Below, one piece after another: positions 1,310 through 62,877 of a stretch of DNA of 64,000 bases. Within the stretch, counting starts at the first letter, position 1, and each line of letters opens with the position of its first letter. The notes under the pieces are model-generated. The model saw nothing but the letters and a program-made list of their open reading frames with translations, had not been told where the DNA came from and made no database searches. Made by a program: the position numbers and the translations under genes. The stretch lies in IMG/VR virus record IMGVR_UViG_3300008259_005066, positions 124,001 to 188,000 of that record. One strand, given 5' to 3'.

Positions 1310-2482
1310 TTAATGTGCATCCATTGCCGTTAGGACCTCGTCAAACAGGCTACGGAAAATACCCAAATGTTTTTGGATTTGCGGTATATCAACTTTCCTA
1401 TGTTTCATAAGTTTGGAAAATCTATCCACAAACTGTTGCCGCCATTGCGGACTGAATTTAACCTTGTCTAACCCATCAATCAGATCTTGTATCCACTGCG
1501 TCTGCTTGGATATCAATCTAAATCTTTGATTGCAATCCTGTAGATACTGTTTCAGTTCGATTTTTTCAGAAACGGTAAGTATGTCCCAAGACCAGCATCC
1601 GGGCGATAGATTGTGCAAAGAAATTGGTGTGCGTTCTCGATTGGCCCAGTCCAAAGTGGCATGCAGATTTTGAATATTAAGCACCTGTGTGACCACATGA
1701 AAATTGAGTTTGATGTTTGATAGTTGTTTCAGTTTTTGGTAATTGCCGATCAAGGTATCCCAGGTGTAAGGGTAACGCATAAGAGCATAGGTTTCTTCTA
1801 TAGCATCTATGCTGATTTGCATTTCAATTGCTTTGATCTCTGTAAGCTTTTTCCAAAGTTCATCAGTCAATACGCTGGCATTGGTTACGATCCTGGCTTC
1901 GAGATTTTTTTCAATGATCTTGTTGCAAATTTTGACGTTGTTTTTGAATAAGAAAAATTCCCCGCCTATGAAACTGACCTGCTCGAGATCAGGTAGCAGA
2001 TCTATAGTTTCCAACACTGTGTCTGTGTTGTCTTTTACATCGATTCTTTGCTTTATGAATCCCAATTGGTAACTTTCTTCGGCATGTTTGCTGGACCATT
2101 CAGGATCACACATAAAACAGGCCATGTTACACACATTGCCAAAAAAAACATCTAACAATTTGATACCCATCTGGTCACTGGCATAGGGTTTTTTCAACAA
2201 CTGTTTTCTAGTGCTGTCTAGACCAATTTGTTCAGATTTCCAACATCTATGACAACCAGGATGTGGTTGCAATCCTTGCAACAAGTTATTTCTGTGCCAG
2301 GACATTTCCTGCCCTTGAAGATATTCGTCAAGACTGGATATAGGACCCTGTGGATCATACACACATCCCGGTTTGAAAATCACTCCATACTGATCATATT
2401 TGCCAGGTATTGAGGCACTATAAGATTCTATTCGTAAAGTAGTAAATGGTGCCGTGCAAAATATTTTGTTGTCTTTGCCCAT
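1310..2482 (-). CDS. Radical SAM protein with N-terminal Cys-rich (SPASM/twitch-like) segment
   Basis: CNMACFMC (CxxxCxxC), GGE motif, extra N-terminal C...C...CHRC. Start moved to ATG 2482 (MGKDNK), 5 nt after CTAAGTA. Confidence 0.85.
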   Translation of the reverse strand: MGKDNKIFCTAPFTTLRIESYSASIPGKYDQYGVIFKPGCVYDPQGPISSLDEYLQGQEMSWHRNNLLQGLQPHPGCHRCWKSEQIGLDSTRKQLLKKPYASDQMGIKLLDVFFGNVCNMACFMCDPEWSSKHAEESYQLGFIKQRIDVKDNTDTVLETIDLLPDLEQVSFIGGEFFLFKNNVKICNKIIEKNLEARIVTNASVLTDELWKKLTEIKAIEMQISIDAIEETYALMRYPYTWDTLIGNYQKLKQLSNIKLNFHVVTQVLNIQNLHATLDWANRERTPISLHNLSPGCWSWDILTVSEKIELKQYLQDCNQRFRLISKQTQWIQDLIDGLDKVKFSPQWRQQFVDRFSKLMKHRKVDIPQIQKHLGIFRSLFDEVLTAMDAH

Positions 2483-2487
2483 GTGAA

Positions 2488-2494
2488 TACTTAG
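2488..2494 (-). promoter_or_regulatory. late-type promoter motif CTAAGTA
   Basis: Variant of recurring NTAA(A/G)TA motif, 5 nt before ATG. Confidence 0.6.
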
Positions 2495-2501
2495 CGAGGT
2501 C

Positions 2502-2534
2502 AAAAAAAGAGGCACCTTTTTAAAGGGTGCCTCT
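2502..2534 (-). terminator. intrinsic terminator after AAA ATPase
   Basis: AGAGGCACCC-tttaaaaa-GGTGCCTCT stem followed by T-run on minus strand. Confidence 0.85.
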
Positions 2535-2585: not shown

Positions 2586-3611
2586 TTATTCGTGTCGCAT
2601 GCAGGTATTCTCTGCTAGGGCTTTCCAGTTAGAACTGACTTTGGTCAAGTCTGCCAATTTCAGCGCCATGCGCAGACTGATCTCGCGCATGCGGGCATGG
2701 TTGTCCTGCATGAATTGGACAATCTCATCGCCCTGTTCGGGTGAGAAATCATAGTCCTGGAACAAGTCACCTTTGCGGAAGATCTGCTTGATGCGCAGGA
2801 TCTTGTCGCGGGTGGTGTTCAGCGTAAGGTCCAGGAAGTGACAGCGACTCTGCAAAGCCTCAAGATGATCTTGCAGTTTCTTGCTCTTGAGATGATCAAA
2901 CTTTAGATTGGTGATGAAAATCACCGAACCCTTGAAGTCGAACTGGTCAGGAACACCTTCACGGCGCAACATCGAAGAGTCTGAATTCCAATGGATACGA
3001 CGTTTTTTGCCCGAGTCCAGAGCGGCTTTCAAGATGTTCAGCGCGATGTCATCTAGCAGAATGGAGTCGCAGTCGTCAAACACCAAGACGTTTTTAGGGT
3101 CCGAATGTTTATACAAGGTGCAATACAATCCTATAGGAGTCATGGCACCTTTGATCACTTCATACTTGATCTTGCGACCGCTGATGTTATCAAACAAGCC
3201 GGCCTTTTCCAGTTGATACTCTACCCCGTAGGATTTGCCCACTCCAGGAGGGCCTGTGACAATCATGGCACGGATGTCGCCAGCGATGGCGGCCTTGGTC
3301 ATGTCGTCTAGGATCCCGAACCGTTGCTCAATACGATCCATGATTTCTTCGTCAGTTTCTTCAGGTTTTTCGGTCTTTTTAAATTCTACTACCTTGTTAG
3401 ATTGCGACACAATACCTCCGGTGATTTCGATGTCTTCGATAGAGTCTAGTTTAACACGGATCTCGTCAGGAAAGCCAGGAAAATTATCGCCGTTTTGCAC
3501 GGTTACGAAATTGCCTTTTGCCGAACTGGAGAAATCTTTCACTAGGGTGAAGTTGGTGTTCACGATGGGTTGATTGCGATACACACCGCGCTTGATGAGG
3601 ACTTGCGTCAT
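2586..3611 (-). CDS. AAA+ family ATPase
   Basis: Walker A GPPGVGKS, Walker B LVFDDCD, ALQSRC arginine-finger-like motif; SD AGGAG. Confidence 0.85.
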   Translation of the reverse strand: MTQVLIKRGVYRNQPIVNTNFTLVKDFSSSAKGNFVTVQNGDNFPGFPDEIRVKLDSIEDIEITGGIVSQSNKVVEFKKTEKPEETDEEIMDRIEQRFGILDDMTKAAIAGDIRAMIVTGPPGVGKSYGVEYQLEKAGLFDNISGRKIKYEVIKGAMTPIGLYCTLYKHSDPKNVLVFDDCDSILLDDIALNILKAALDSGKKRRIHWNSDSSMLRREGVPDQFDFKGSVIFITNLKFDHLKSKKLQDHLEALQSRCHFLDLTLNTTRDKILRIKQIFRKGDLFQDYDFSPEQGDEIVQFMQDNHARMREISLRMALKLADLTKVSSNWKALAENTCMRHE

Positions 3612-3643
3612 TGTCTAGGCTCCTTTTTTGTTACTATACCCAT

Positions 3644-3672
3644 ATTATAGCAAAATGGCTAATTCTGGTCAA
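3644..3672 (-). promoter_or_regulatory. sigma70-type early promoter (proximal)
   Basis: TTGACC-N17-TATAAT. Confidence 0.8.
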
Positions 3673-3749
3673 CCTGGGCAAAAATCCCCCATTTTATGGG
3701 TGTTGTTTTTTTGCCACAGATCTATTCTGCTAAAATTTACTATAATTGT

Positions 3750-3778
3750 ATTTTACGGAAAAAGGATTTTGTGGTCAA
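3750..3778 (-). promoter_or_regulatory. sigma70-type early promoter (distal)
   Basis: TTGACC-N17-TAAAAT. Confidence 0.75.
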
Positions 3779-3782
3779 CCAC

Positions 3783-3808
3783 AAAAAAACCCTGCCGAAG
3801 GCAGGGTT
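3783..3808 (-). terminator. intrinsic terminator
   Basis: AACCCTGC-C(TTCG)G-GCAGGGTT then T-run. Confidence 0.9.
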
Positions 3809-3829
3809 GTTTTACCATTTGAAACTATA

Positions 3830-4273
3830 TCAGGTGGGTGATACATTACCTGGATTTGTTACATCAATAGTGAACGTGATGGTCTCTCCTGCGCTGATTT
3901 CAAAAAACCAACCGCTCCAGATGGGGCTCTGGGGCGTGCCGCCTGGCATTGGATCCACTGGTGTGGCTGGCCATTCAGGTGCTTGTCCGTTGATTAGGAT
4001 GTCGTTGTTTCTCATATCAAAGCCACAGGTAGATGGATCAGTTGAACGGACTACTTGCCCCACAGTGATTACACCGGATGTGACAGATACTGACACAGGG
4101 GCAGTAACAACAGCGTTGCCTGTCACTGGAATATCTGTAGAAAACAATGTAATTTCTGTGTCTAGCGGTTGTCCAACTCCTACTTGTCCGCTAAAAACTT
4201 CATTGCCATCGATTAAAATTGTTGTTGCCGAGGGTGTTGCAAAAACACGTCCGCGGAATAATACGCTTGCCAT
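3830..4273 (-). CDS. hypothetical protein, beta-rich, possibly virion-associated
   Basis: 147-aa ORF with SD AAGGA, own terminator and upstream late motif. Confidence 0.7.
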   Translation of the reverse strand: MASVLFRGRVFATPSATTILIDGNEVFSGQVGVGQPLDTEITLFSTDIPVTGNAVVTAPVSVSVTSGVITVGQVVRSTDPSTCGFDMRNNDILINGQAPEWPATPVDPMPGGTPQSPIWSGWFFEISAGETITFTIDVTNPGNVSPT

Positions 4274-4292
4274 AATTTTTCCTTTTGAATAT

Positions 4293-4386
4293 CTAAATAC
4301 GACATTAGGCTGGCTATCGCTTGGCTTAGCGCACCCGGATCTTTATCGTGCGATACAGCCGTATCCGAACCGCACATAGTATTTAG
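4293..4386 (-). ncRNA. candidate structured 5' leader RNA (unnamed)
   Basis: Non-coding interval with several short helices and loop-loop complementarity, bounded by a CTAAATAC/GTATTTAG inverted repeat. Confidence 0.4.
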
Positions 4387-5141
4387 CACCAGTGCTGTTC
4401 AATCACAGCATCTTTCACTTCGTGTGGTTTGGGACTGCCATGGAAAATCAACACACTGGTAGAATCTGGTATGTGTGTTCCAGTGCCGGGGGCTAGATAT
4501 TTACGGGTGCGAAAATCAAATCCTCCATCTTTGAGTTGCCAGCGCCAACTTTGCACCCTGGTTTTTTCAAAGTAATTTTCTCGGCCAGGACCCAGTATCT
4601 CATGTAGATAGTCCTGATCACCGTGCCATGCCGTGCGTTTGTGTGCTATTTGCCCAGGATCAAAATGCTGATAAATGTGCGCGAACTTCGCAGGATCAAA
4701 CCACATCATGCTGGAGTTCATGGCTATTTTACTGGGCCGGAACAGATATTTGAAGTCTTGCACAGCCCAGAATCTATCCGTGGGCAATCGCCACACCCAA
4801 TCAAGATTGCCTACGATCACTGTGTCCAGATCCAAATACAGCATGGGTCCTCTATGATGCCGTGGGTTGAATAACTGTATCTTGTACCACCACGATCGTT
4901 TGGGGCCGCGCACACCAGGCCATTCTTCCAAGGCATGATGTATCATGTGACCAGGCACTACTCTGTTGCTTTCGGTATAAACATGCATTCTCACCGGCAG
5001 AGAAAGATTGCGACAAAGAGCATTGTAGAGTTTGTCCACATAGTCCCATGGATACAAGGTGTCGTGTATCAAGCAGGCGCAATCAATATGCTCCAATGTC
5101 GCTGTTTCTACGACAGCGCGGTTTTTATTCTTTTTAACCAT
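4383..5141 (-). CDS. GT-A fold glycosyltransferase (GT8-like)
   Basis: LYLDLDTV DxD motif, GDQDYL motif, C-terminal IFHGSPKPH. Confidence 0.75.
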   Translation of the reverse strand: MVKKNKNRAVVETATLEHIDCACLIHDTLYPWDYVDKLYNALCRNLSLPVRMHVYTESNRVVPGHMIHHALEEWPGVRGPKRSWWYKIQLFNPRHHRGPMLYLDLDTVIVGNLDWVWRLPTDRFWAVQDFKYLFRPSKIAMNSSMMWFDPAKFAHIYQHFDPGQIAHKRTAWHGDQDYLHEILGPGRENYFEKTRVQSWRWQLKDGGFDFRTRKYLAPGTGTHIPDSTSVLIFHGSPKPHEVKDAVIEQHWC

Positions 5142-5956
5142 GAACCTTGTCTTATTTCATCAACTGTGTATTCTGTGTGGCATATCTCAACTAACCATCG
5201 ATCTCTGTCGTGATCTACCAACGTGTCTAGATCCTCGTATTTGGTACGAATAGGAGCAGCCAAACTGCTGGGATCCACGATGACTTGGCAACCAGACAGG
5301 GCGGCCTGTATGCCCGAGCCACTGTTATAATTTATCAAGGCCCTGCAGTCATAATTGATATCAAAATCATCGTAGGTATTTTTTATAGGGCGAGGCATTT
5401 CTATGGTCACATCTCGAGGCAAAAGACCTGGATCCAATGCACTCCTGGGATGTGGTCTCACGACTATGGGCAAGTCTGTGTGTGAACGAGCCAAGGCGAT
5501 TTGTTGATTGATCCAGTGTTCCATGCTGGGCAATGATTCTACCTGGAAACTCTGTTTGTGTTGCGCGGCTATGATCAATCGTGGTTGGCCCAAGCGCACT
5601 GGATATAGTTTAACTCCCAATTTGGCAGGGCGATCCCAATCAAGATCCGTGGTGTGTCCATAGTATCCCTGTGCGGTGATGTTGTCCACAGCGATCTTCC
5701 ATGTGTGCCCACGTTTCAGTGCGCCCACATCTATCACTATCACCGGTCGGCCGAGATTTTTATAATGCTGATACACTGAACGATTGGGTTGCATGCGACC
5801 GTGCCACAACACCGACCAGATCACCGCTACATCCGCATCTAGAGAATTTTCTCTACGTTGCCATCCCTGTTGAGAACATCGATCCAAAAAGGCTCCCAAC
5901 ACTTCTTTGCTGTTGAGAGCGCACTGAGATGGAAAATAGGCGATGGTCTTGATCAC
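5108..5956 (-). CDS. capsule-synthesis (KpsC/KpsS-like) GT-B protein
   Basis: LIIAAQ...IVVRPHP...INYNSGSGIQAALSG pattern. Start set at GTG 5956 (VIKTIAYFP); the ORF-track extension to 6388 overlaps a real plus-strand gene. Confidence 0.6.
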   Translation of the reverse strand: MIKTIAYFPSQCALNSKEVLGAFLDRCSQQGWQRRENSLDADVAVIWSVLWHGRMQPNRSVYQHYKNLGRPVIVIDVGALKRGHTWKIAVDNITAQGYYGHTTDLDWDRPAKLGVKLYPVRLGQPRLIIAAQHKQSFQVESLPSMEHWINQQIALARSHTDLPIVVRPHPRSALDPGLLPRDVTIEMPRPIKNTYDDFDINYDCRALINYNSGSGIQAALSGCQVIVDPSSLAAPIRTKYEDLDTLVDHDRDRWLVEICHTEYTVDEIRQGSWLKRIKTALS

Positions 5957-20170: not shown

Positions 20171-20715
20171 CTCAATACCAGCACTTCTCTCACTGTGTTG
20201 CCCGGCACGCAGGACAGCATGCCACAGAATCCACGAGGTTCATTGACATAGATGCTGGCTAGATTGGGTTCATAATTGACCACATCAACATCGTGTCTAG
20301 TGAGCCGGCGCATAGGCTGATAGTCTAGTTCGCTTTCCGCATTGACCTGGCTGTCATGACAGAAACAGAATGCCATACGGCAGTCGGATTCTTCGCCCAT
20401 GCCAATCTGCACCTGCACCAAGATGTCAGGATGTAGCCTGTGCATCATTATGGAACTGCCGGCTAGATCGATGCTGACATAGGCCACTTGCGGTGCCAGA
20501 GGCCGGCCGACCAGTTGGCTCACACGTTCAGTGTTGGCTTCTACTATCTGTTGTAATTCGGGAGTGTCTGACCATGGTGTGAGCAAACGGTCGTCATACT
20601 GCATGGAAAATGGCACGCGAGATCGTCTATATGCCAGTTTGATCGATCGCCATTGATCGGGTTCAAAGAAATCTTTGGCCGTCCACAGTTGCTGATTGAT
20701 CCGGACAGCGTTCAT
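20152..20715 (-). CDS. divergent paralog of the adjacent 2OG-Fe(II) oxygenase-like protein
   Basis: IDLAGSSIMMHRLHPDILVQVQ aligns ungapped with LDLPGFACQTHSDSPDIIVTYQ of 19610..20170. Confidence 0.55.
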   Translation of the reverse strand: MNAVRINQQLWTAKDFFEPDQWRSIKLAYRRSRVPFSMQYDDRLLTPWSDTPELQQIVEANTERVSQLVGRPLAPQVAYVSIDLAGSSIMMHRLHPDILVQVQIGMGEESDCRMAFCFCHDSQVNAESELDYQPMRRLTRHDVDVVNYEPNLASIYVNEPRGFCGMLSCVPGNTVREVLVLSYTKLY

Positions 20716-22223
20716 GACCGAGCTAGATTCAATAATCTATCTAGCCCTTGGCTTTCTTTGATGCCTATATATTCGGTTCGTTGACCAGCGGGTCTGATGC
20801 CCACTTCCATGCTGGGGTATTTGTTCTTGAGATTCTGTGCGTGTTTCCGGGCCTGCTCACGATTGCCATATTGATGTAGGCCGGATTCGATACCATCACG
20901 CCTGCGTATCACATCATAGGGTCCTTGAGCATCTGGTTCTGCAGAGATGTCGCCCATGGCCAATCTTTTTACCTGTCCTTCTTTGACTGCATCAAGGTCT
21001 ATGGCATCCATACCTGGTATGCCCAACTGTTCCAATCTTTTTTGCACACGAGGATCGTCCCACACATTGGCGTCAGGGTTGGTCATGGCCATGTCTTCCA
21101 AGATGTCAAACAGTTCGTCGTCGCCAATGATGTCATACAGTTGTTCTGTGGCATTGGAAGCATCAGGTCCCACGATGAGATCTTTGCTCATCAAGATCTG
21201 TAATTTTTTTACCTGCTCAGGAGTCTCTGGTATGGCCCAGGTGCCTTCCATCACACGGTCAGTCCATGATTCAAATTCGTCGGCTTCGGGGAGATCCTGT
21301 TCTTGCAGTCGTGCCAGCACAGGCAAGGCCTGTTCTACTCTAGGATCCAAAGTCTGTTTCACGAACAATTCGCGTATGGTCTCCACTGCTTCGTCTATCT
21401 CTGTGATCTCAGCAGGATCAAAACTGTCACGTTCTTCGTGATAGCCTCTGCGACCTATCATCTTCTTGGCCTTGGCTTTGAGATCAGCGTAGTGGCGTAT
21501 GGCAGCTTCTACCATGTGCGCGGCTTCACCGGTATAGTCACGATGCCGTGCCGCACGCACGAAGTTGCTGAGCGTTTTCATCTCATCCACGATCTCTGTG
21601 ATGTGGATGCCAAAGGCATCGTAGGGTGTGCCACCTTCGGCCACGTGTCGTGCCAGCATGCGACCATGTGTGAGGCTGCGGCTGGGCACACGGAAACGTT
21701 CACCTTCGGCATTCTCTACATAGAGGCTTTCGATATGGCGGAAACGTGCATCACCTTCACCCAAGGTTTTGTTGTGTTTGATCACAAGCCGTGCGCGATT
21801 GGGTTGATCTGAGTAGGAAATCTTGCGGTTGCCATAGTAGCCTTCAAACAGGCTTTCTTTGACGGCAGCCATGGTCTTCATGTTGTATTTGAGTCTGCTG
21901 AGATTTTTTACGTTAAACGTGAGCAGATTGCGTTTGGCGAACATGCGAACCAGATACAGGAAATCATACCAGTCGCCACGATCATTGCCTTCCATGGCTC
22001 GTGCCATGTTGTCTCCAAAATACATGTCCAGGTTGTTTTCACCGTCCAGGGCCACTACCACAGTGCCATAGTCCTTTTCAGGAGTGGCATAGTCAAAACT
22101 GATGATGTCTGCATCAGCAGGATCAGCGGCGGGTTTGCCTTGGCTGTCCAGGGCTTCGGGTTCAAAATCCTGCGCTACGAGCAGGTCATATAGTTGGCGT
22201 GCGGGTGTGTTTTTATCGCTCAT
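20712..22223 (-). CDS. hypothetical head-associated protein
   Basis: 503-aa ORF after terminase with late motif; several (L/V/I)xE sites. Confidence 0.6.
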   Translation of the reverse strand: MSDKNTPARQLYDLLVAQDFEPEALDSQGKPAADPADADIISFDYATPEKDYGTVVVALDGENNLDMYFGDNMARAMEGNDRGDWYDFLYLVRMFAKRNLLTFNVKNLSRLKYNMKTMAAVKESLFEGYYGNRKISYSDQPNRARLVIKHNKTLGEGDARFRHIESLYVENAEGERFRVPSRSLTHGRMLARHVAEGGTPYDAFGIHITEIVDEMKTLSNFVRAARHRDYTGEAAHMVEAAIRHYADLKAKAKKMIGRRGYHEERDSFDPAEITEIDEAVETIRELFVKQTLDPRVEQALPVLARLQEQDLPEADEFESWTDRVMEGTWAIPETPEQVKKLQILMSKDLIVGPDASNATEQLYDIIGDDELFDILEDMAMTNPDANVWDDPRVQKRLEQLGIPGMDAIDLDAVKEGQVKRLAMGDISAEPDAQGPYDVIRRRDGIESGLHQYGNREQARKHAQNLKNKYPSMEVGIRPAGQRTEYIGIKESQGLDRLLNLARS

Positions 22224-23840: not shown

Positions 23841-24377
23841 ATGAGCGACACGTTAGTATTAGCACCAGACTATCAACCAGTAAACTACTTGCCGCTGTCA
23901 ACCATAGATTGGCAGACTGCTATCAAACTGTTCTTCTTGGACAAGATCCAAGTGCTAGAATGGTATGACGATTGGACTGTGCGCAGTGCCAAATTGGAAA
24001 TGCGTGTGCCTGCTGTGGCTGTCACAAAGAAAGGATTTGGTAAGAATGGTGGTATGCGTTTCAGCCGCCAGAATCTCTATCTGCGTGATCTGTTTACTTG
24101 CCAATATTGCAATGACACCTTGGGCGCAAGACATCTAACCATAGACCATGTGTTGCCCAGAGCACAAGGTGGCATCACTTCTTGGGAAAACTGCGTGACC
24201 TGTTGCAAGACCTGCAACTCCAACAAAGGCAACAAGGTGTGGAGGCCAAACAAAACTCCTTACAAGCCTAACTACTGGAAGTTGGTAGATTCAGTGAAGA
24301 GCACTTATCGAGGGGTGCGGCATCCTTCGTGGCATCTGTATCTGGGCCTCAAAGAAGAACAGATACGAACCTACTGA
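23841..24377 (+). CDS. HNH endonuclease (McrA-like)
   Basis: CQYC...TIDHVLP...ENCVTCCKTCNSNK. Confidence 0.9.
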   Translation: MSDTLVLAPDYQPVNYLPLSTIDWQTAIKLFFLDKIQVLEWYDDWTVRSAKLEMRVPAVAVTKKGFGKNGGMRFSRQNLYLRDLFTCQYCNDTLGARHLTIDHVLPRAQGGITSWENCVTCCKTCNSNKGNKVWRPNKTPYKPNYWKLVDSVKSTYRGVRHPSWHLYLGLKEEQIRTY

Positions 24378-24822: not shown

Positions 24823-26445
24823 TTATGTTATTTCTTGCCATTCCACACTGGCATAGACGTCTTGATTGGTGCCGGTGGTGGCCATGGTAATCACATACTC
24901 GTATGGTGTGCCAGTAAAAGGCTCTCGCTCCAGCTGATATTCAAAAGTAAATGTTTCTTGCGTGGGAGAACCTGTGCTCTGGTTGGTTGAGTTTATGAAT
25001 GACTGTTCAGCGATGTCGCCTGACACCAAGGCTGTGGGAGCGAGGTTGTATTGCACTGAACTGTCTACAGCTGAATCCGTCCATGAGCCACCTGATGTGA
25101 TGGCTTTTTTATAGATTCGGAACTGGAATATGCTGGCAGCCACAGGTACCAGGCTGTAGTTTATGGGTATAACCACGGCATTGAGATTGGTGCTCTTGAG
25201 TCGGATAGCGATAACGGGTTTAAAAGTCTGATCATTGGGCAAGCGAACCGGAGTGCCTATGGCATGACTGGCGGCTCTGGGATTGCCTGATCCACTCAGT
25301 TGGAATCCACCTTCAGAGATCACTGTGCTACAGATCTGTGTCATCATGCTGGTGCCGGCGACAGCGCCAGTGTTGGTTATTTCATAGCGTATGGGCAAGG
25401 TGGCCGTGGTCATGTAGACCTTGGTGTTGCCCGGTTGATTGGCATGAGGAAATGAATGACAGATAATATACGCACCGTTGATGACAAAGCCCACACGCAC
25501 TGAGCCCACGCCCAGCCACTCCACATCAGCAAAAAAGATCTGTGTTCGATCAGGATACAGCGTGATACCAGACGGATTGGTCACAGGTCCTGTGCCATTG
25601 AGTTGATCGACATTCCAGGCATCTTGTCTGATACGCTCTTCCACTCCAGTGGATCCTGAACGTATGACCATGTAGTTGTAGGATCCATCGTTTTCAAAAT
25701 ACACACCGTCGTTGGCATCAAACAAGCCCACACGCTGGCGGAGATTTGTCTTTGGTGTGTTAAAACAAAATGTGTTCAGTGTGAGTTGGCTCTTGCCAGG
25801 CTGGTAAGGAAATGGCTTCAGCGTTTCTCTCAGCACTGAATCGCCCGACGCTGTGCCCACGTTGAGCTGATAGGAACTCTGAGCGGCTACATATACCACG
25901 TTGCCAGTGCCAGATATGGAGTTAGCAAACTGGCCATGATCGTAGTAGCGAGCCTGAGTTTCAAACAGGCTAACAGGTTCAGACACACGCAGACGCCCAA
26001 ACGCATCGGCAGTGGCTCCGCCAAACCCAGATATCACTACATTGGCGTCATCAGCCAGCACCACATTGGCCGTGCCAGTGATGCCCACATTGCCATCTAT
26101 GGTTATGCTTCCACCACCATCAACCACAGTGACGTTGGCAGTGATACCCGCGATGTTTCCGGTTATGCCCACATTGCCCGACGTTATAGCGACATTGGTG
26201 TTGCCTGAGATCACCCAAGGTGTGGTGCCCTGGAAAACAGTGACATTGCCCGATATGGGCATGGTGTTGCCTGTGAGATCGATATTACCCAGTGCGCCAA
26301 TGCTTATATTGCCCACTGACACATTGCCAACTAGCACAGCGTTGGTGCGGACAAATACGTTGCCGGTGGCCTCGTCCAGCTCCAGGGCCTGCGTTATGTT
26401 ACGTAGATACCACGGTGCTACGTTAGCTGGATTTGGATAGGCCAT
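24823..26445 (-). CDS. hypothetical virion structural protein
   Basis: 540 aa; GNV/GNI repeats followed by beta-rich domain; CTAAATA 7 nt upstream (26453-26459). Confidence 0.6.
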   Translation of the reverse strand: MAYPNPANVAPWYLRNITQALELDEATGNVFVRTNAVLVGNVSVGNISIGALGNIDLTGNTMPISGNVTVFQGTTPWVISGNTNVAITSGNVGITGNIAGITANVTVVDGGGSITIDGNVGITGTANVVLADDANVVISGFGGATADAFGRLRVSEPVSLFETQARYYDHGQFANSISGTGNVVYVAAQSSYQLNVGTASGDSVLRETLKPFPYQPGKSQLTLNTFCFNTPKTNLRQRVGLFDANDGVYFENDGSYNYMVIRSGSTGVEERIRQDAWNVDQLNGTGPVTNPSGITLYPDRTQIFFADVEWLGVGSVRVGFVINGAYIICHSFPHANQPGNTKVYMTTATLPIRYEITNTGAVAGTSMMTQICSTVISEGGFQLSGSGNPRAASHAIGTPVRLPNDQTFKPVIAIRLKSTNLNAVVIPINYSLVPVAASIFQFRIYKKAITSGGSWTDSAVDSSVQYNLAPTALVSGDIAEQSFINSTNQSTGSPTQETFTFEYQLEREPFTGTPYEYVITMATTGTNQDVYASVEWQEIT

Positions 26446-62022: not shown

Positions 62023-62784
62023 TTAGCTGTTGTAGTTTTCTACGATGCCAAGATCCAAAAGATTCTGCTGTGTGCCTGTGTTACCAGATCCGGTTGTGCC
62101 CGATTTGATAACTGTGCCTTCGTCTGTAAAGAAGTTGGCAGCATAACGCACATCATTGACCACGCTGGTGGCAGCATAGGTAGATCCACCTGTGAAGTCC
62201 AAGATGAACTTGTTGGTCAACTTGCTGATACGGCGTGCTGTAGAGTCATTCAATGTGAACGTGATGTTCATATTGCCCGAAGTCAATGTTGTATCGGCTT
62301 CGTCGGCTAAGATGCAAACACCAACTGCGTTTACTCGACCTGTGCCGGTGCTACCAAGTGCGGCTGTAGCAGTAAAGATTTGACCCACTGTGGGTGTGCC
62401 AGTTACTCCGTAAGCAGTCCAATTGGTGTCGCCAACAACAGTGATGCGATACGCTGTGCCTGATACCAATGCTGTGCGAGCGGTCGTGCCACCAACCAAG
62501 AACTTGTGTGCGCCTTTTTGTGTGATGATGTAACCATCTTCTTCAGCAAAACCTGTGATACGCACACGGCATTTCACAGTGGGATAGTTTGCTGAATCCA
62601 CTGTGTTGGATCCACCAACCACACCTTCATATTCAGTGGCCGAACCAGGTGTGAAACCTGTGGGTACCACGGGTGCTGTCAGTGCTGAAAAAGGATTGAA
62701 GCCGATGTCAACTCCGGGATTAGCGCCGGTTGAAGAGTTATAACTCGTTTCCGAGATGTTTTTGATTTTGAGAGGACGTCCCAT
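62023..62784 (-). CDS. hypothetical virion structural protein (MGRPLKI N-terminus)
   Basis: 253 aa, strong TAAGGAG SD, late motif, own terminator. Confidence 0.65.
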   Translation of the reverse strand: MGRPLKIKNISETSYNSSTGANPGVDIGFNPFSALTAPVVPTGFTPGSATEYEGVVGGSNTVDSANYPTVKCRVRITGFAEEDGYIITQKGAHKFLVGGTTARTALVSGTAYRITVVGDTNWTAYGVTGTPTVGQIFTATAALGSTGTGRVNAVGVCILADEADTTLTSGNMNITFTLNDSTARRISKLTNKFILDFTGGSTYAATSVVNDVRYAANFFTDEGTVIKSGTTGSGNTGTQQNLLDLGIVENYNS

Positions 62785-62789
62785 TTTGT

Positions 62790-62877
62790 TTTCTCCTTAA
62801 AGAAGCCCAATGCGGGTTCTAGCCGCTACGCAGGGGGTTGATGCCTGCATAAAACGCTGAATTGCGTTGTGTAAGAG
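62790..62877 (-). ncRNA. candidate structured 5' leader RNA (unnamed)
   Basis: Three consecutive hairpins between late motif (62878-62884) and SD. Confidence 0.4.

What the first reader, a model, noticed from the sequence alone, without database searches (positions are those of the whole stretch)
4293..4386. Candidate pseudoknotted or switchable RNA leader bounded by an inverted late-promoter motif
Seen on the minus transcript: helix GUGCG/CGCAC with a GUUCGG bulge, and an inner AUAC/GUAU stem capped by a GGCU loop. A second hairpin CGCU/AGCG has loop AAGCCA, complementary to GGCU, and AGCC occurs three times. A second GUGCG (4334-4330) could compete for CGCAC, and UCGGAU can pair with AUCCGG. 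The element sits between CTAAATAC and GTATTTAG (perfect 8-bp inverted repeat, i.e. convergent late motifs), ahead of a monocistronic 147-aa gene. Inference: a riboswitch-like, ribozyme-like or protein-binding RNA, possibly with an antisense counter-transcript. I cannot match it to a named family.
Basis: partly seen in the sequence, partly recalled or inferred. Interest (0 to 1): 0.6.

Follow-up and report, generated by a model that had tools for sequence, protein, structure and literature searches.

The report
Pseudoknotted 5' leader of phage late mRNA

Summary
From this sequence alone nothing exceeds chance (MFE z-score -0.72).

I collected 23 distinct homologous leaders from freshwater phage contigs. 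They show a conserved fold on the minus (sense) strand:
- P1, a helix that starts about 5 nt after the late-promoter box TAAATA.
- A 6-9 bp pseudoknot (PK) between the P1 loop (AUACGGC) and GUCGUAU, about 55 nt downstream.
- P2, a bipartite helix (GGGU/GCCU plus GCU/AGC) nested between the pseudoknot arms.

In this model 93% of pair cells are paired, against 31-46% when partners are slid. Twelve pairs change on both sides, and 0 of 500 shuffles match the observed values.

The element occurs once per genome. It is found only upstream of one family of beta-sandwich proteins that resemble carbohydrate-binding modules (CBMs). No Rfam 15 family matches it.

Its spacing to the promoter is tight (0-7 nt), while its spacing to the ribosome-binding site is loose and A/U-rich (20-52 nt to the AUG). 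I therefore favour a cis-acting element at the 5' end of the mRNA that protects it from decay. A protein-binding operator or a riboswitch remains possible.

The parts
4379..4386 (-). Late-promoter box CTAAATAC (T4-type, -13 to -6). Its TAA is also the stop codon of the upstream glycosyltransferase gene (4383-5141).
   Evidence: TAAATA touches non-coding DNA in 45 of 90 genome occurrences, although only about 5% of the genome is non-coding, and it often sits 5-30 nt before start codons. The genome encodes a gp55-like late sigma factor. The box is invariant in all 23 leaders.
4371..4375 (-). P1 5' strand, GUGCG (extends to 4376-4369, UGUGCGGU, in this phage). The predicted transcript start is at about 4374.
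   Evidence: All five P1 pairs change on both sides among homologues. P1 starts a median of 5 nt after TAAATA.
4365..4367 (-). P1b 5' strand, CGG (pairs with CUG at 4358-4356).
   Evidence: 97% of cells are paired; C-G changes to U-A in L217 and L228.
4358..4364 (-). Pseudoknot 5' arm, AUACGGC, in the P1 hairpin loop.
   Evidence: Pairs with 4303-4297. It is 96% paired, and 5 of 6 pairs change on both sides. A contiguous 6-9 bp duplex is present in all 23 leaders. RNAalifold finds it unaided.
4348..4352 (-). P1 3' strand, CGCAC (extends to 4354-4347).
4337..4347 (-). A/U-rich linker ending in the invariant CC (4338-4337).
   Evidence: C48 and C49 are invariant in 23 of 23 leaders. Their partner is unknown.
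4307..4336 (-). P2 domain: GGGU (4336-4333) pairs with GCCU (4310-4307), and GCU (4330-4328) pairs with AGC (4315-4313). They are separated by a 2x2 internal loop and capped by the variable loop UAAG...CGAU.
   Evidence: 96% of cells are paired. Changes are one-sided only: U-A, U-G and C-G at the closing pairs. Support comes mostly from conservation.
4297..4303 (-). Pseudoknot 3' arm, GUCGUAU.
4274..4296 (-). A/U-rich spacer containing the Shine-Dalgarno sequence AAGGA (4284-4280).
   Evidence: The distance from the pseudoknot to the AUG is 20-52 nt and 68-87% A+U across homologues. Some clades carry an extra hairpin here.
3830..4273 (-). 147-aa gene for a beta-sandwich protein that resembles a carbohydrate-binding module.
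   Evidence: AlphaFold2 pLDDT 86. The best PDB match is 2xhh (CBM36/60-like), Z 7.1. At least 167 homologues exist, some with a CBM_5_12 insert.
3788..3808 (-). Intrinsic terminator that ends the monocistronic unit.
   Evidence: A 9-bp stem with 6 G-C pairs, followed by a T run.

Best explanation
The stretch is the 5' untranslated leader of a short, monocistronic late mRNA of a T4-related freshwater jumbo phage.

What is shown:
- Transcription is expected to start about 6 nt after the box CTAAATA, that is at the first pair of helix P1.
- The first ~80 nt fold into a conserved pseudoknot. P1 (plus a short P1b) closes a loop whose bases AUACGGC pair with GUCGUAU about 55 nt downstream.
- The bipartite helix P2, with its conserved cap, sits in the long connecting loop.
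- The Shine-Dalgarno sequence lies 10-45 nt further on, in an A/U-rich and mostly unstructured spacer. It is not part of the conserved fold.

What is inferred:
- The fold acts in cis at the 5' end of the transcript as a compact, base-paired 5' terminus.
- Such a terminus would protect this strongly expressed late mRNA from 5'-end-dependent decay (pyrophosphohydrolase, RNase E or RNase J entry) and so raise its yield.
- The conserved unpaired bases may also make it a docking site for a factor.
For: Structure:
- 23 distinct leaders give 93.2% paired cells, against 31-46% for slid partners. Twelve pairs change on both sides, and 0 of 500 shuffles reach the observed values.
- The pseudoknot is contiguous over 6-9 bp in every sequence, with about nine different arm pairs. 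Examples are AUACGGC/GUCGUAU, ACACGAC/GUCGUGU, GGUACAGC/GCUGUACU and CGCAGU/ACUGCG.
- RNAalifold recovers the long-range helix and P2 from a MAFFT alignment without guidance.
- Many G-U pairs fit the sense-strand RNA and would be C-A mismatches on the other strand.

Promoter:
- TAAATA is strongly enriched in non-coding DNA and often sits just upstream of start codons.
- The genome encodes a gp55-like late sigma factor.
- T4 late promoters are an 8-bp box at the -10 position (PMC2988020).

Tie to the 5' end:
- The distance from the box to P1 is 0-7 nt, median 5.
- The distance from the fold to the AUG is 20-52 nt.

Expression:
- Contigs from 4 metatranscriptomes in 4 studies, 100% identical, lie only at 3825-4351. 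That is inside the predicted unit; none lies on the flanking genes.
- A terminator follows immediately after the gene.

Dispensability: relatives with 130-132-aa proteins have the box 20-30 nt before the AUG and no element.
Against: - The transcript start is predicted, not mapped. The RNA contigs cannot show ends or strand and could include DNA carry-over.
- A simple protective hairpin would not need an invariant CC, a conserved UAAG...CGAU cap and a 7-bp pseudoknot. That degree of conservation is more typical of a ligand- or protein-binding RNA.
- The element is restricted to one gene family and occurs once per genome. This suggests a gene-specific role rather than a general stabiliser.
- No stability or translation measurement exists.
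Confidence: 0.45

Rival explanations
1. Translational operator bound by a protein. The candidate binder is the gene's own product or another phage late protein, in the manner of the T4 gene 32 leader, where a 5' pseudoknot nucleates repressor binding that spreads over an A/U-rich region to the ribosome-binding site.
For: - The layout is the same: a 5' pseudoknot, then an A/U-rich spacer (68-87% A+U), then the Shine-Dalgarno sequence (T4 case in PMC3014915).
- The element has a strict one-to-one association with one gene family.
- Conserved unpaired bases (CC, UAAG, CGAU) could be contact points.
Against: - The product is predicted to be a beta-sandwich resembling carbohydrate-binding modules, not a nucleic-acid binder.
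- The spacer length varies 2.5-fold. In several clades it holds a stable hairpin that would interrupt cooperative spreading.
- No binding data exist.
Confidence: 0.22
2. A new riboswitch class: the pseudoknot domain is an aptamer for a small molecule that tunes expression of the downstream glycan-binding-like protein.
For: - It is an ~80-nt conserved fold with a pseudoknot and invariant unpaired nucleotides in a 5' UTR.
- Its neighbours are glycosyltransferase genes.
Against: - No expression platform was found. There is no terminator in the leader and no conserved pairing that hides the Shine-Dalgarno sequence. The distance from the ribosome-binding site to the fold is variable.
- The controlled gene is not a metabolic or transport gene.
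- No Rfam riboswitch model matches, even at E up to 10.
Confidence: 0.12
3. A self-cleaving ribozyme, for example a pistol-like RNA whose hairpin loop forms a pseudoknot with a downstream strand.
For: A hairpin-loop-to-downstream 6-7 bp pseudoknot is also the core of pistol ribozymes (from memory, not tested as a fold match).
Against: - No hit to any Rfam ribozyme family at E up to 10.
- Here the 3' arm lies outside P2 rather than in an internal loop.
- One metatranscriptome contig runs uninterrupted from 4351 to 4201, across P2 and the 3' arm.
Confidence: 0.03
4. One reading: a switchable leader bounded by convergent late promoters, with an antisense counter-transcript starting at CTAAATAC 4293-4300 (+).
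For: The 8-bp inverted repeat is perfect in this phage, and T4 late promoters need only the box.
Against: - The reverse box is found at that place in 1 of 23 leaders.
- The repeat's pairs are kept in 68% of cells, with no double change.
- The competing GUGCG pairing is not kept when P1 changes.
- No RNA contig extends upstream of 4351 (weak evidence).
Confidence: 0.04

Closest known systems
T4 gene 32 mRNA leader (5' pseudoknot translational operator and stabilising leader)
   Same: - It belongs to a T4-related phage.
- An H-type pseudoknot lies at the 5' end of the mature mRNA.
- An A/U-rich stretch follows, leading to the ribosome-binding site (PMC3014915).
   Different: - The downstream gene is different: a beta-sandwich CBM-like late protein, not an ssDNA-binding protein.
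- The fold is larger, with a whole helix domain (P2) inserted between the pseudoknot arms.
- There is no sequence similarity.
- The spacer is variable and sometimes structured.
- The binder is unknown.
freshwater-2 RNA (Rfam RF02980)
   Same: - It is present in the same window (62782-62869, minus strand, 69 bits).
- It also starts a few bases after a TAAATAC box.
- It also runs to an AAGGA ribosome-binding site of a late gene of unknown function.
- It comes from the same habitat.
   Different: - It is three simple hairpins with no pseudoknot in the Rfam model.
- There is no sequence similarity.
- My covariance model finds only the 4271-4385 copy in the genome.
5'-terminal stabilising stem-loops of bacterial and phage mRNAs (ompA-type leaders)
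   Same: A helix begins within a few bases of the predicted 5' end, upstream of an accessible ribosome-binding site (mechanism from general knowledge).
   Different: This element is far more elaborate and sequence-conserved than a simple terminal hairpin, and its stabilising effect is untested.
T4 e / soc / 49 / I-TevI leaders (ribosome-binding site hidden in read-through transcripts, with a late promoter inside the hairpin)
   Same: A late promoter box forms one arm of an inverted repeat in front of a late gene that lies in an early-gene neighbourhood (PMC3014915).
   Different: Here the repeat does not cover the Shine-Dalgarno sequence or the AUG, and it is not conserved.

Membership tests
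Any Rfam 15 family | Covariance-model score at or near the family's gathering threshold | tested here: not met
   cmscan of 4150-4550 with permissive filters, E up to 10, gave only a 16.6-bit chance match to psRNA14 on the other strand. The whole-window gathering scan found only freshwater-2, elsewhere in the window.
T4-type late transcription unit | A TATAAATA-like box at the -10 position with no -35 element, and a gp55-type sigma factor in the genome | tested here: met
   (C/A)TAAATA is enriched in non-coding DNA and often lies just upstream of start codons. A 308-aa gp55-like protein matches phrog_12791 at E 3.8e-78. The box is invariant in all 23 leaders.
T4-type late transcription unit | A mapped RNA 5' end about 6 nt after the box | not testable with these tools
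   Only assembled metatranscriptome contigs were available; they cannot show ends.
T4 gene 32-type translational operator | A 5' H-type pseudoknot followed by an A/U-rich region that reaches the ribosome-binding site | tested here: met
   The pseudoknot is supported by covariation. The spacer is 68-87% A+U.
T4 gene 32-type translational operator | It lies upstream of, and is bound by, an ssDNA/RNA-binding protein encoded by the same mRNA | tested here: not met
   The downstream protein is a beta-sandwich closest to CBM36/60 modules, with no Pfam or PHROG match. Binding itself cannot be tested here.
Riboswitch | A conserved aptamer-like fold in a 5' UTR | tested here: met
Riboswitch | An expression platform: a terminator/antiterminator or conserved occlusion of the ribosome-binding site | tested here: not met
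   There is no terminator-like site on the minus strand between 4274 and 4386. No conserved pairing of the Shine-Dalgarno sequence was found. The spacer is 20-52 nt.
Riboswitch | Specific ligand binding | not testable with these tools
   Needs in-line probing or a similar assay.
Pistol or other self-cleaving ribozymes | A match to the family model, and site-specific self-cleavage | tested here: not met
   No ribozyme family was reported at E up to 10. Cleavage itself cannot be tested here.
5'-terminal mRNA stabiliser | A helix starting within about 0-3 nt of the transcript's 5' end | tested here: inconclusive
   P1 starts 0-7 nt (median 5) after the box. That is where a T4-type start is expected, but the start is not mapped.
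T4 e/soc-type read-through silencing hairpin | The Shine-Dalgarno sequence or AUG pairs with sequence upstream of the late start | tested here: not met
   The inverted repeat ends 13 nt before the Shine-Dalgarno sequence. It is kept in 68% of cells without compensatory change, and the reverse box occurs in 1 of 23 leaders.

The most novel reading that the evidence does not exclude
The pseudoknot domain is a new class of sensing RNA in jumbo freshwater phages. It would be either an aptamer for a small molecule or a specific operator for a phage or host protein, and it would set how much of a glycan-binding virion-surface protein is made late in infection. A further option is a bacterial-virus counterpart of nuclease-resistant 5' RNA folds.
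Probability: 0.3. Interest if true: 0.75.

Novelty: new member of a known kind. Interest (0 to 1): 0.55.

Why it matters
Conserved pseudoknots in phage 5' leaders are rare. A 2010 review called the T4 gene 32 pseudoknot possibly the only viral example used for translational autoregulation (PMC3014915).

This is a second, unrelated and larger pseudoknotted leader in the T4 lineage. It is well supported by covariation, widespread in lake metagenomes and tied to one late gene.

It offers a compact and testable model for how large phages tune the stability or translation of single late messages. It also adds a candidate family to RNA catalogues.

The same genome carries the orphan freshwater-2 motif in the same promoter-leader arrangement. 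This places that motif too in a late-mRNA leader of a T4-like phage.

Tried and rejected
- Nucleotide search of GenBank phages with 3600-5200 found no match. tblastn of the 147-aa protein against the same set found no match.
- Three DNA-pattern scans of IMG/VR returned mostly chance hits and only three leader variants that protein-based searches had not already brought in (L010, L025, L303): the P1-loop core, the loop core plus CCGGG and the P2 domain.
- 80 loci were fetched through the neighbouring nrdC.10-like AAA protein. Only 6 carry the 147-aa family, and only 3 of those carry the leader.
- A single-sequence fold is not significant. Per-homologue ViennaRNA folds and Shine-Dalgarno accessibility gave no consistent picture, because pseudoknots are not modelled.
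- An all-against-all column-pair scan for further tertiary pairs was swamped by clade structure. The candidate pairs 47-65 and 68-74 were not pursued.
- The alternative long-range pairing UUCGGA/UCCGGG is 86% paired but not better than shuffles. It conflicts with P1b, the pseudoknot and P2, so I left it as unresolved.
- Foldseek against PDB and BFVD found nothing below E 1e-3 for the protein. ESM Atlas matches all had TM below 0.45.
- The supplements of the IMG/VR structured-RNA catalogue (PMC10690425) are not held. I therefore could not check whether the motif is already one of its 8,495 unnamed candidates.
- A literature search for 'freshwater-2' returned nothing.

Full report
**Context**

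The window is bases 124001-188000 of a 209.5-kb IMG/VR virus record. An identical copy of the locus lies on a 315.8-kb contig, so the phage is a jumbo phage.

Most genes are on the minus strand. The neighbouring 341-aa AAA protein is the counterpart of T4 nrdC.10. The genome encodes a gp55-like late sigma factor: phrog_12791 at E 3.8e-78, and a T4 gp55 match at E 3.2e-6.

The hexamer TAAATA, usually preceded by C or A, occurs 90 times. Half of the occurrences touch the roughly 5% of the genome that is non-coding, and many lie 5-30 nt before start codons. This matches the T4 late promoter, an 8-bp box at the -10 position with no -35 element (PMC2988020).

The flagged stretch lies between the stop codon of a glycosyltransferase gene (4383-5141, phrog_1962; its TAA is inside the box) and a 147-aa ORF (3830-4273). 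That ORF is followed by a strong terminator (3808-3788). Two sigma-70-like promoters for the next gene come after the terminator.

**The observation**

From this sequence alone it is not more than chance. The fold has a z-score of -0.72, and the 8-mer occurs 3 times against 0.9 expected, a count that 4 of 100 shuffles reach. Rfam 15 has nothing at this place even at E = 10.

**Homologues**

The 147-aa protein has no Pfam, PHROG or GenBank-phage match. It has at least 167 relatives in metagenomes.

I collected 23 distinct leaders through protein-based locus searches, pattern scans and twelve contig look-ups. Synteny is constant: a glycosyltransferase-like gene, then TAAATA, then a leader of 106-142 nt, then the protein (139-184 aa, some with a CBM_5_12 insert), and in most loci the nrdC.10-like gene next.

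A sister clade with 130-132-aa proteins has the box only 20-30 nt before the AUG and carries no element.

**The fold**

Positions are counted from the T of TAAATA, so position n equals window coordinate 4386-n.

- P1 pairs 11-15 with 34-38 (GUGCG/CGCAC). In other lineages it becomes AGAUAGU/GCUAUUU, GGUGUGA/UCACACC, GGUAG/CUACC, AUGUAACAU/AUGUUACAU, ACACGA/UCGUGU, CACAGA/UCUGUG or ACUUGU/ACAAGU.
- P1b pairs 19-21 with 28-30 (CGG/CUG, or UGG/CUA in L217).
- The loop bases 22-28 (AUACGGC) pair with 83-89 (GUCGUAU). This pseudoknot is a contiguous 6-9 bp duplex in all 23 sequences. It shows about nine different arm pairs, including complete replacement by CGCAGU/ACUGCG in L047 and L228.
- P2 pairs 50-53 with 76-79 and 56-58 with 71-73. 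It lies between the pseudoknot arms and is supported mainly by invariance plus U-A, U-G and C-G exchanges.

On the MAFFT alignment A3, which was not fitted to any structure, the model gives these figures:

- 93.2% of cells are paired, against 31-46% when partners are slid by 1-3 columns.
- 12 of 21 pairs change on both sides.
- 0 of 500 shuffles reach the observed values.
- The pseudoknot helix alone is 96.4% paired, and 5 of its 6 pairs covary.

RNAalifold on the same alignment chose the long-range helix plus P2 unaided. The many G-U pairs fit only the sense-strand RNA.

- Inner AUAC/GUAU stem: 64% paired.
- CGCU/AGCG hairpin: 61% paired.
- GGCU:AGCC loop contact: 74% paired.
- The 8-bp inverted repeat: 68% paired with no double change.
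- The competing second GUGCG: 71% paired with no double change.
- UCGGAU/AUCCGG: 86% paired but no better than shuffles, and it clashes with P1b, the pseudoknot and P2.
- The reverse promoter box exists at that place only in this lineage.

The 'bounding inverted repeat' is therefore the promoter box on one side and, on the other, the tail of the true pseudoknot arm plus three bases.

**Distribution**

A covariance model of the leader finds one copy in the 209-kb genome. It finds none in the searched loci that carry the nrdC.10-like gene but lack the long-leader form of the protein gene.

**Expression**

Contigs from four metatranscriptomes in four studies, all 100% identical, lie only between 3825 and 4351. 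That is inside the predicted promoter-to-terminator unit, and one contig covers most of the leader. None lies on the flanking genes within the 1.5 kb laid.

Contigs cannot show ends, strand or level, and the runs were chosen with this stretch. This is modest support that the unit is transcribed and abundant.

**Protein**

AlphaFold2 with 56 homologues gives a confident beta-sandwich (pLDDT 86). The best structural neighbour is a CBM36/60-type carbohydrate-binding module (2xhh, Z 7.1, 105 residues, rmsd 4.0), a middling match. With the CBM_5_12 inserts in some relatives, a glycan-binding virion or accessory protein is likely. Nothing suggests nucleic-acid binding.

**Mechanism**

The fold's distance to the promoter box is tightly kept (0-7 nt, median 5). 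That places the first P1 pair at the expected T4-type start. Its distance to the AUG ranges from 20 to 52 nt of A/U-rich sequence, which in some clades holds an extra hairpin.

No terminator or conserved occlusion of the Shine-Dalgarno sequence was found. This asymmetry favours a role that depends on being at the 5' end of the transcript, namely a compact base-paired terminus that shields the message from 5'-end-dependent decay. It argues against roles that must reach the ribosome-binding site.

The degree of sequence conservation and the strict gene association keep a protein-binding operator and, less likely, a riboswitch in play. The closest precedent is the T4 gene 32 leader (PMC3014915).

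**Novelty**

This is a new RNA family of a known general kind, a structured cis-acting phage 5' leader. I could not check the 8,495 unnamed IMG/VR candidates of PMC10690425.

Noticed in passing
window 62782-62869 (-), box at 62884-62877, ORF 62023-62784 (-): Rfam freshwater-2 RNA (RF02980, 69 bits) sits in the same arrangement: ATAAATAC box, then a ~90-nt structured leader, then an AAGGAG ribosome-binding site. The gene behind it is a 253-aa protein with no PHROG match. This places that orphan motif in a late-mRNA leader of a T4-like phage.
   Followed up: partly
window 24823-26445 (-), 20712-22223 (-), 23841-24377 (+); also several genes outside the window: TAAATA lies only 5-8 nt before the called ATG of several genes, including virion structural proteins. 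With a T4-type start these mRNAs would be leaderless or nearly so. The start codons were not verified.
   Followed up: no
L307:1381-2307 (-) = G000:C1 about 206172-207098: The gp55-like late sigma factor is 308 aa, much longer than T4 gp55 (185 aa). The T4-like part is in the C-terminal two thirds.
   Followed up: partly
L004 (IMGVR_UViG_3300032116_000004, 315,778 nt): An identical copy of the locus lies on a 315.8-kb contig. The 209.5-kb record (CheckV completeness 60%) is therefore a fragment of a jumbo phage. Related contigs reach 338 kb.
   Followed up: no
L044, L045, L046/L007, L048, L222, L230: A sister clade of the protein (130-132 aa, without the variable middle insert) lacks the leader altogether. 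Its promoter box is 20-30 nt before the AUG.
   Followed up: partly
L020, L196-L198, L212, L025, L026, L217, L303 (spacer between pseudoknot and Shine-Dalgarno sequence): Some clades carry an extra small hairpin in the spacer (for example CUAGAAAAUCUAG or AUCAAAAUUUGAU). L025 and L026 also have a second forward TAAATA there. In L010 a local hairpin pairs UCCUU with the Shine-Dalgarno AAGGA.
   Followed up: no
window 3644-3778 (-): Two tandem sigma-70-like promoters (TTGACC-17-TAAAAT and TTGACC-17-TATAAT) lie between the terminator and the nrdC.10-like AAA gene. The late unit is therefore an island between early-type genes.
   Followed up: no
window 1310-2515 (-): A radical SAM protein (Pfam PF04055, E 9e-15) lies just downstream of the nrdC.10-like gene, close to several glycosyltransferase-like genes.
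   Followed up: no
L050, L053, L054, L057-L061, L066-L068, L070, L072, L073, L076-L078: An unrelated, highly conserved stretch was picked up by chance by a pattern scan in about 20 contigs of one metagenome. It contains the hairpin GUCUC-UUCG-GAGAC and lies about 80 nt before an ATGATCAACAAGAA... ORF. It may be another structured leader.
   Followed up: no
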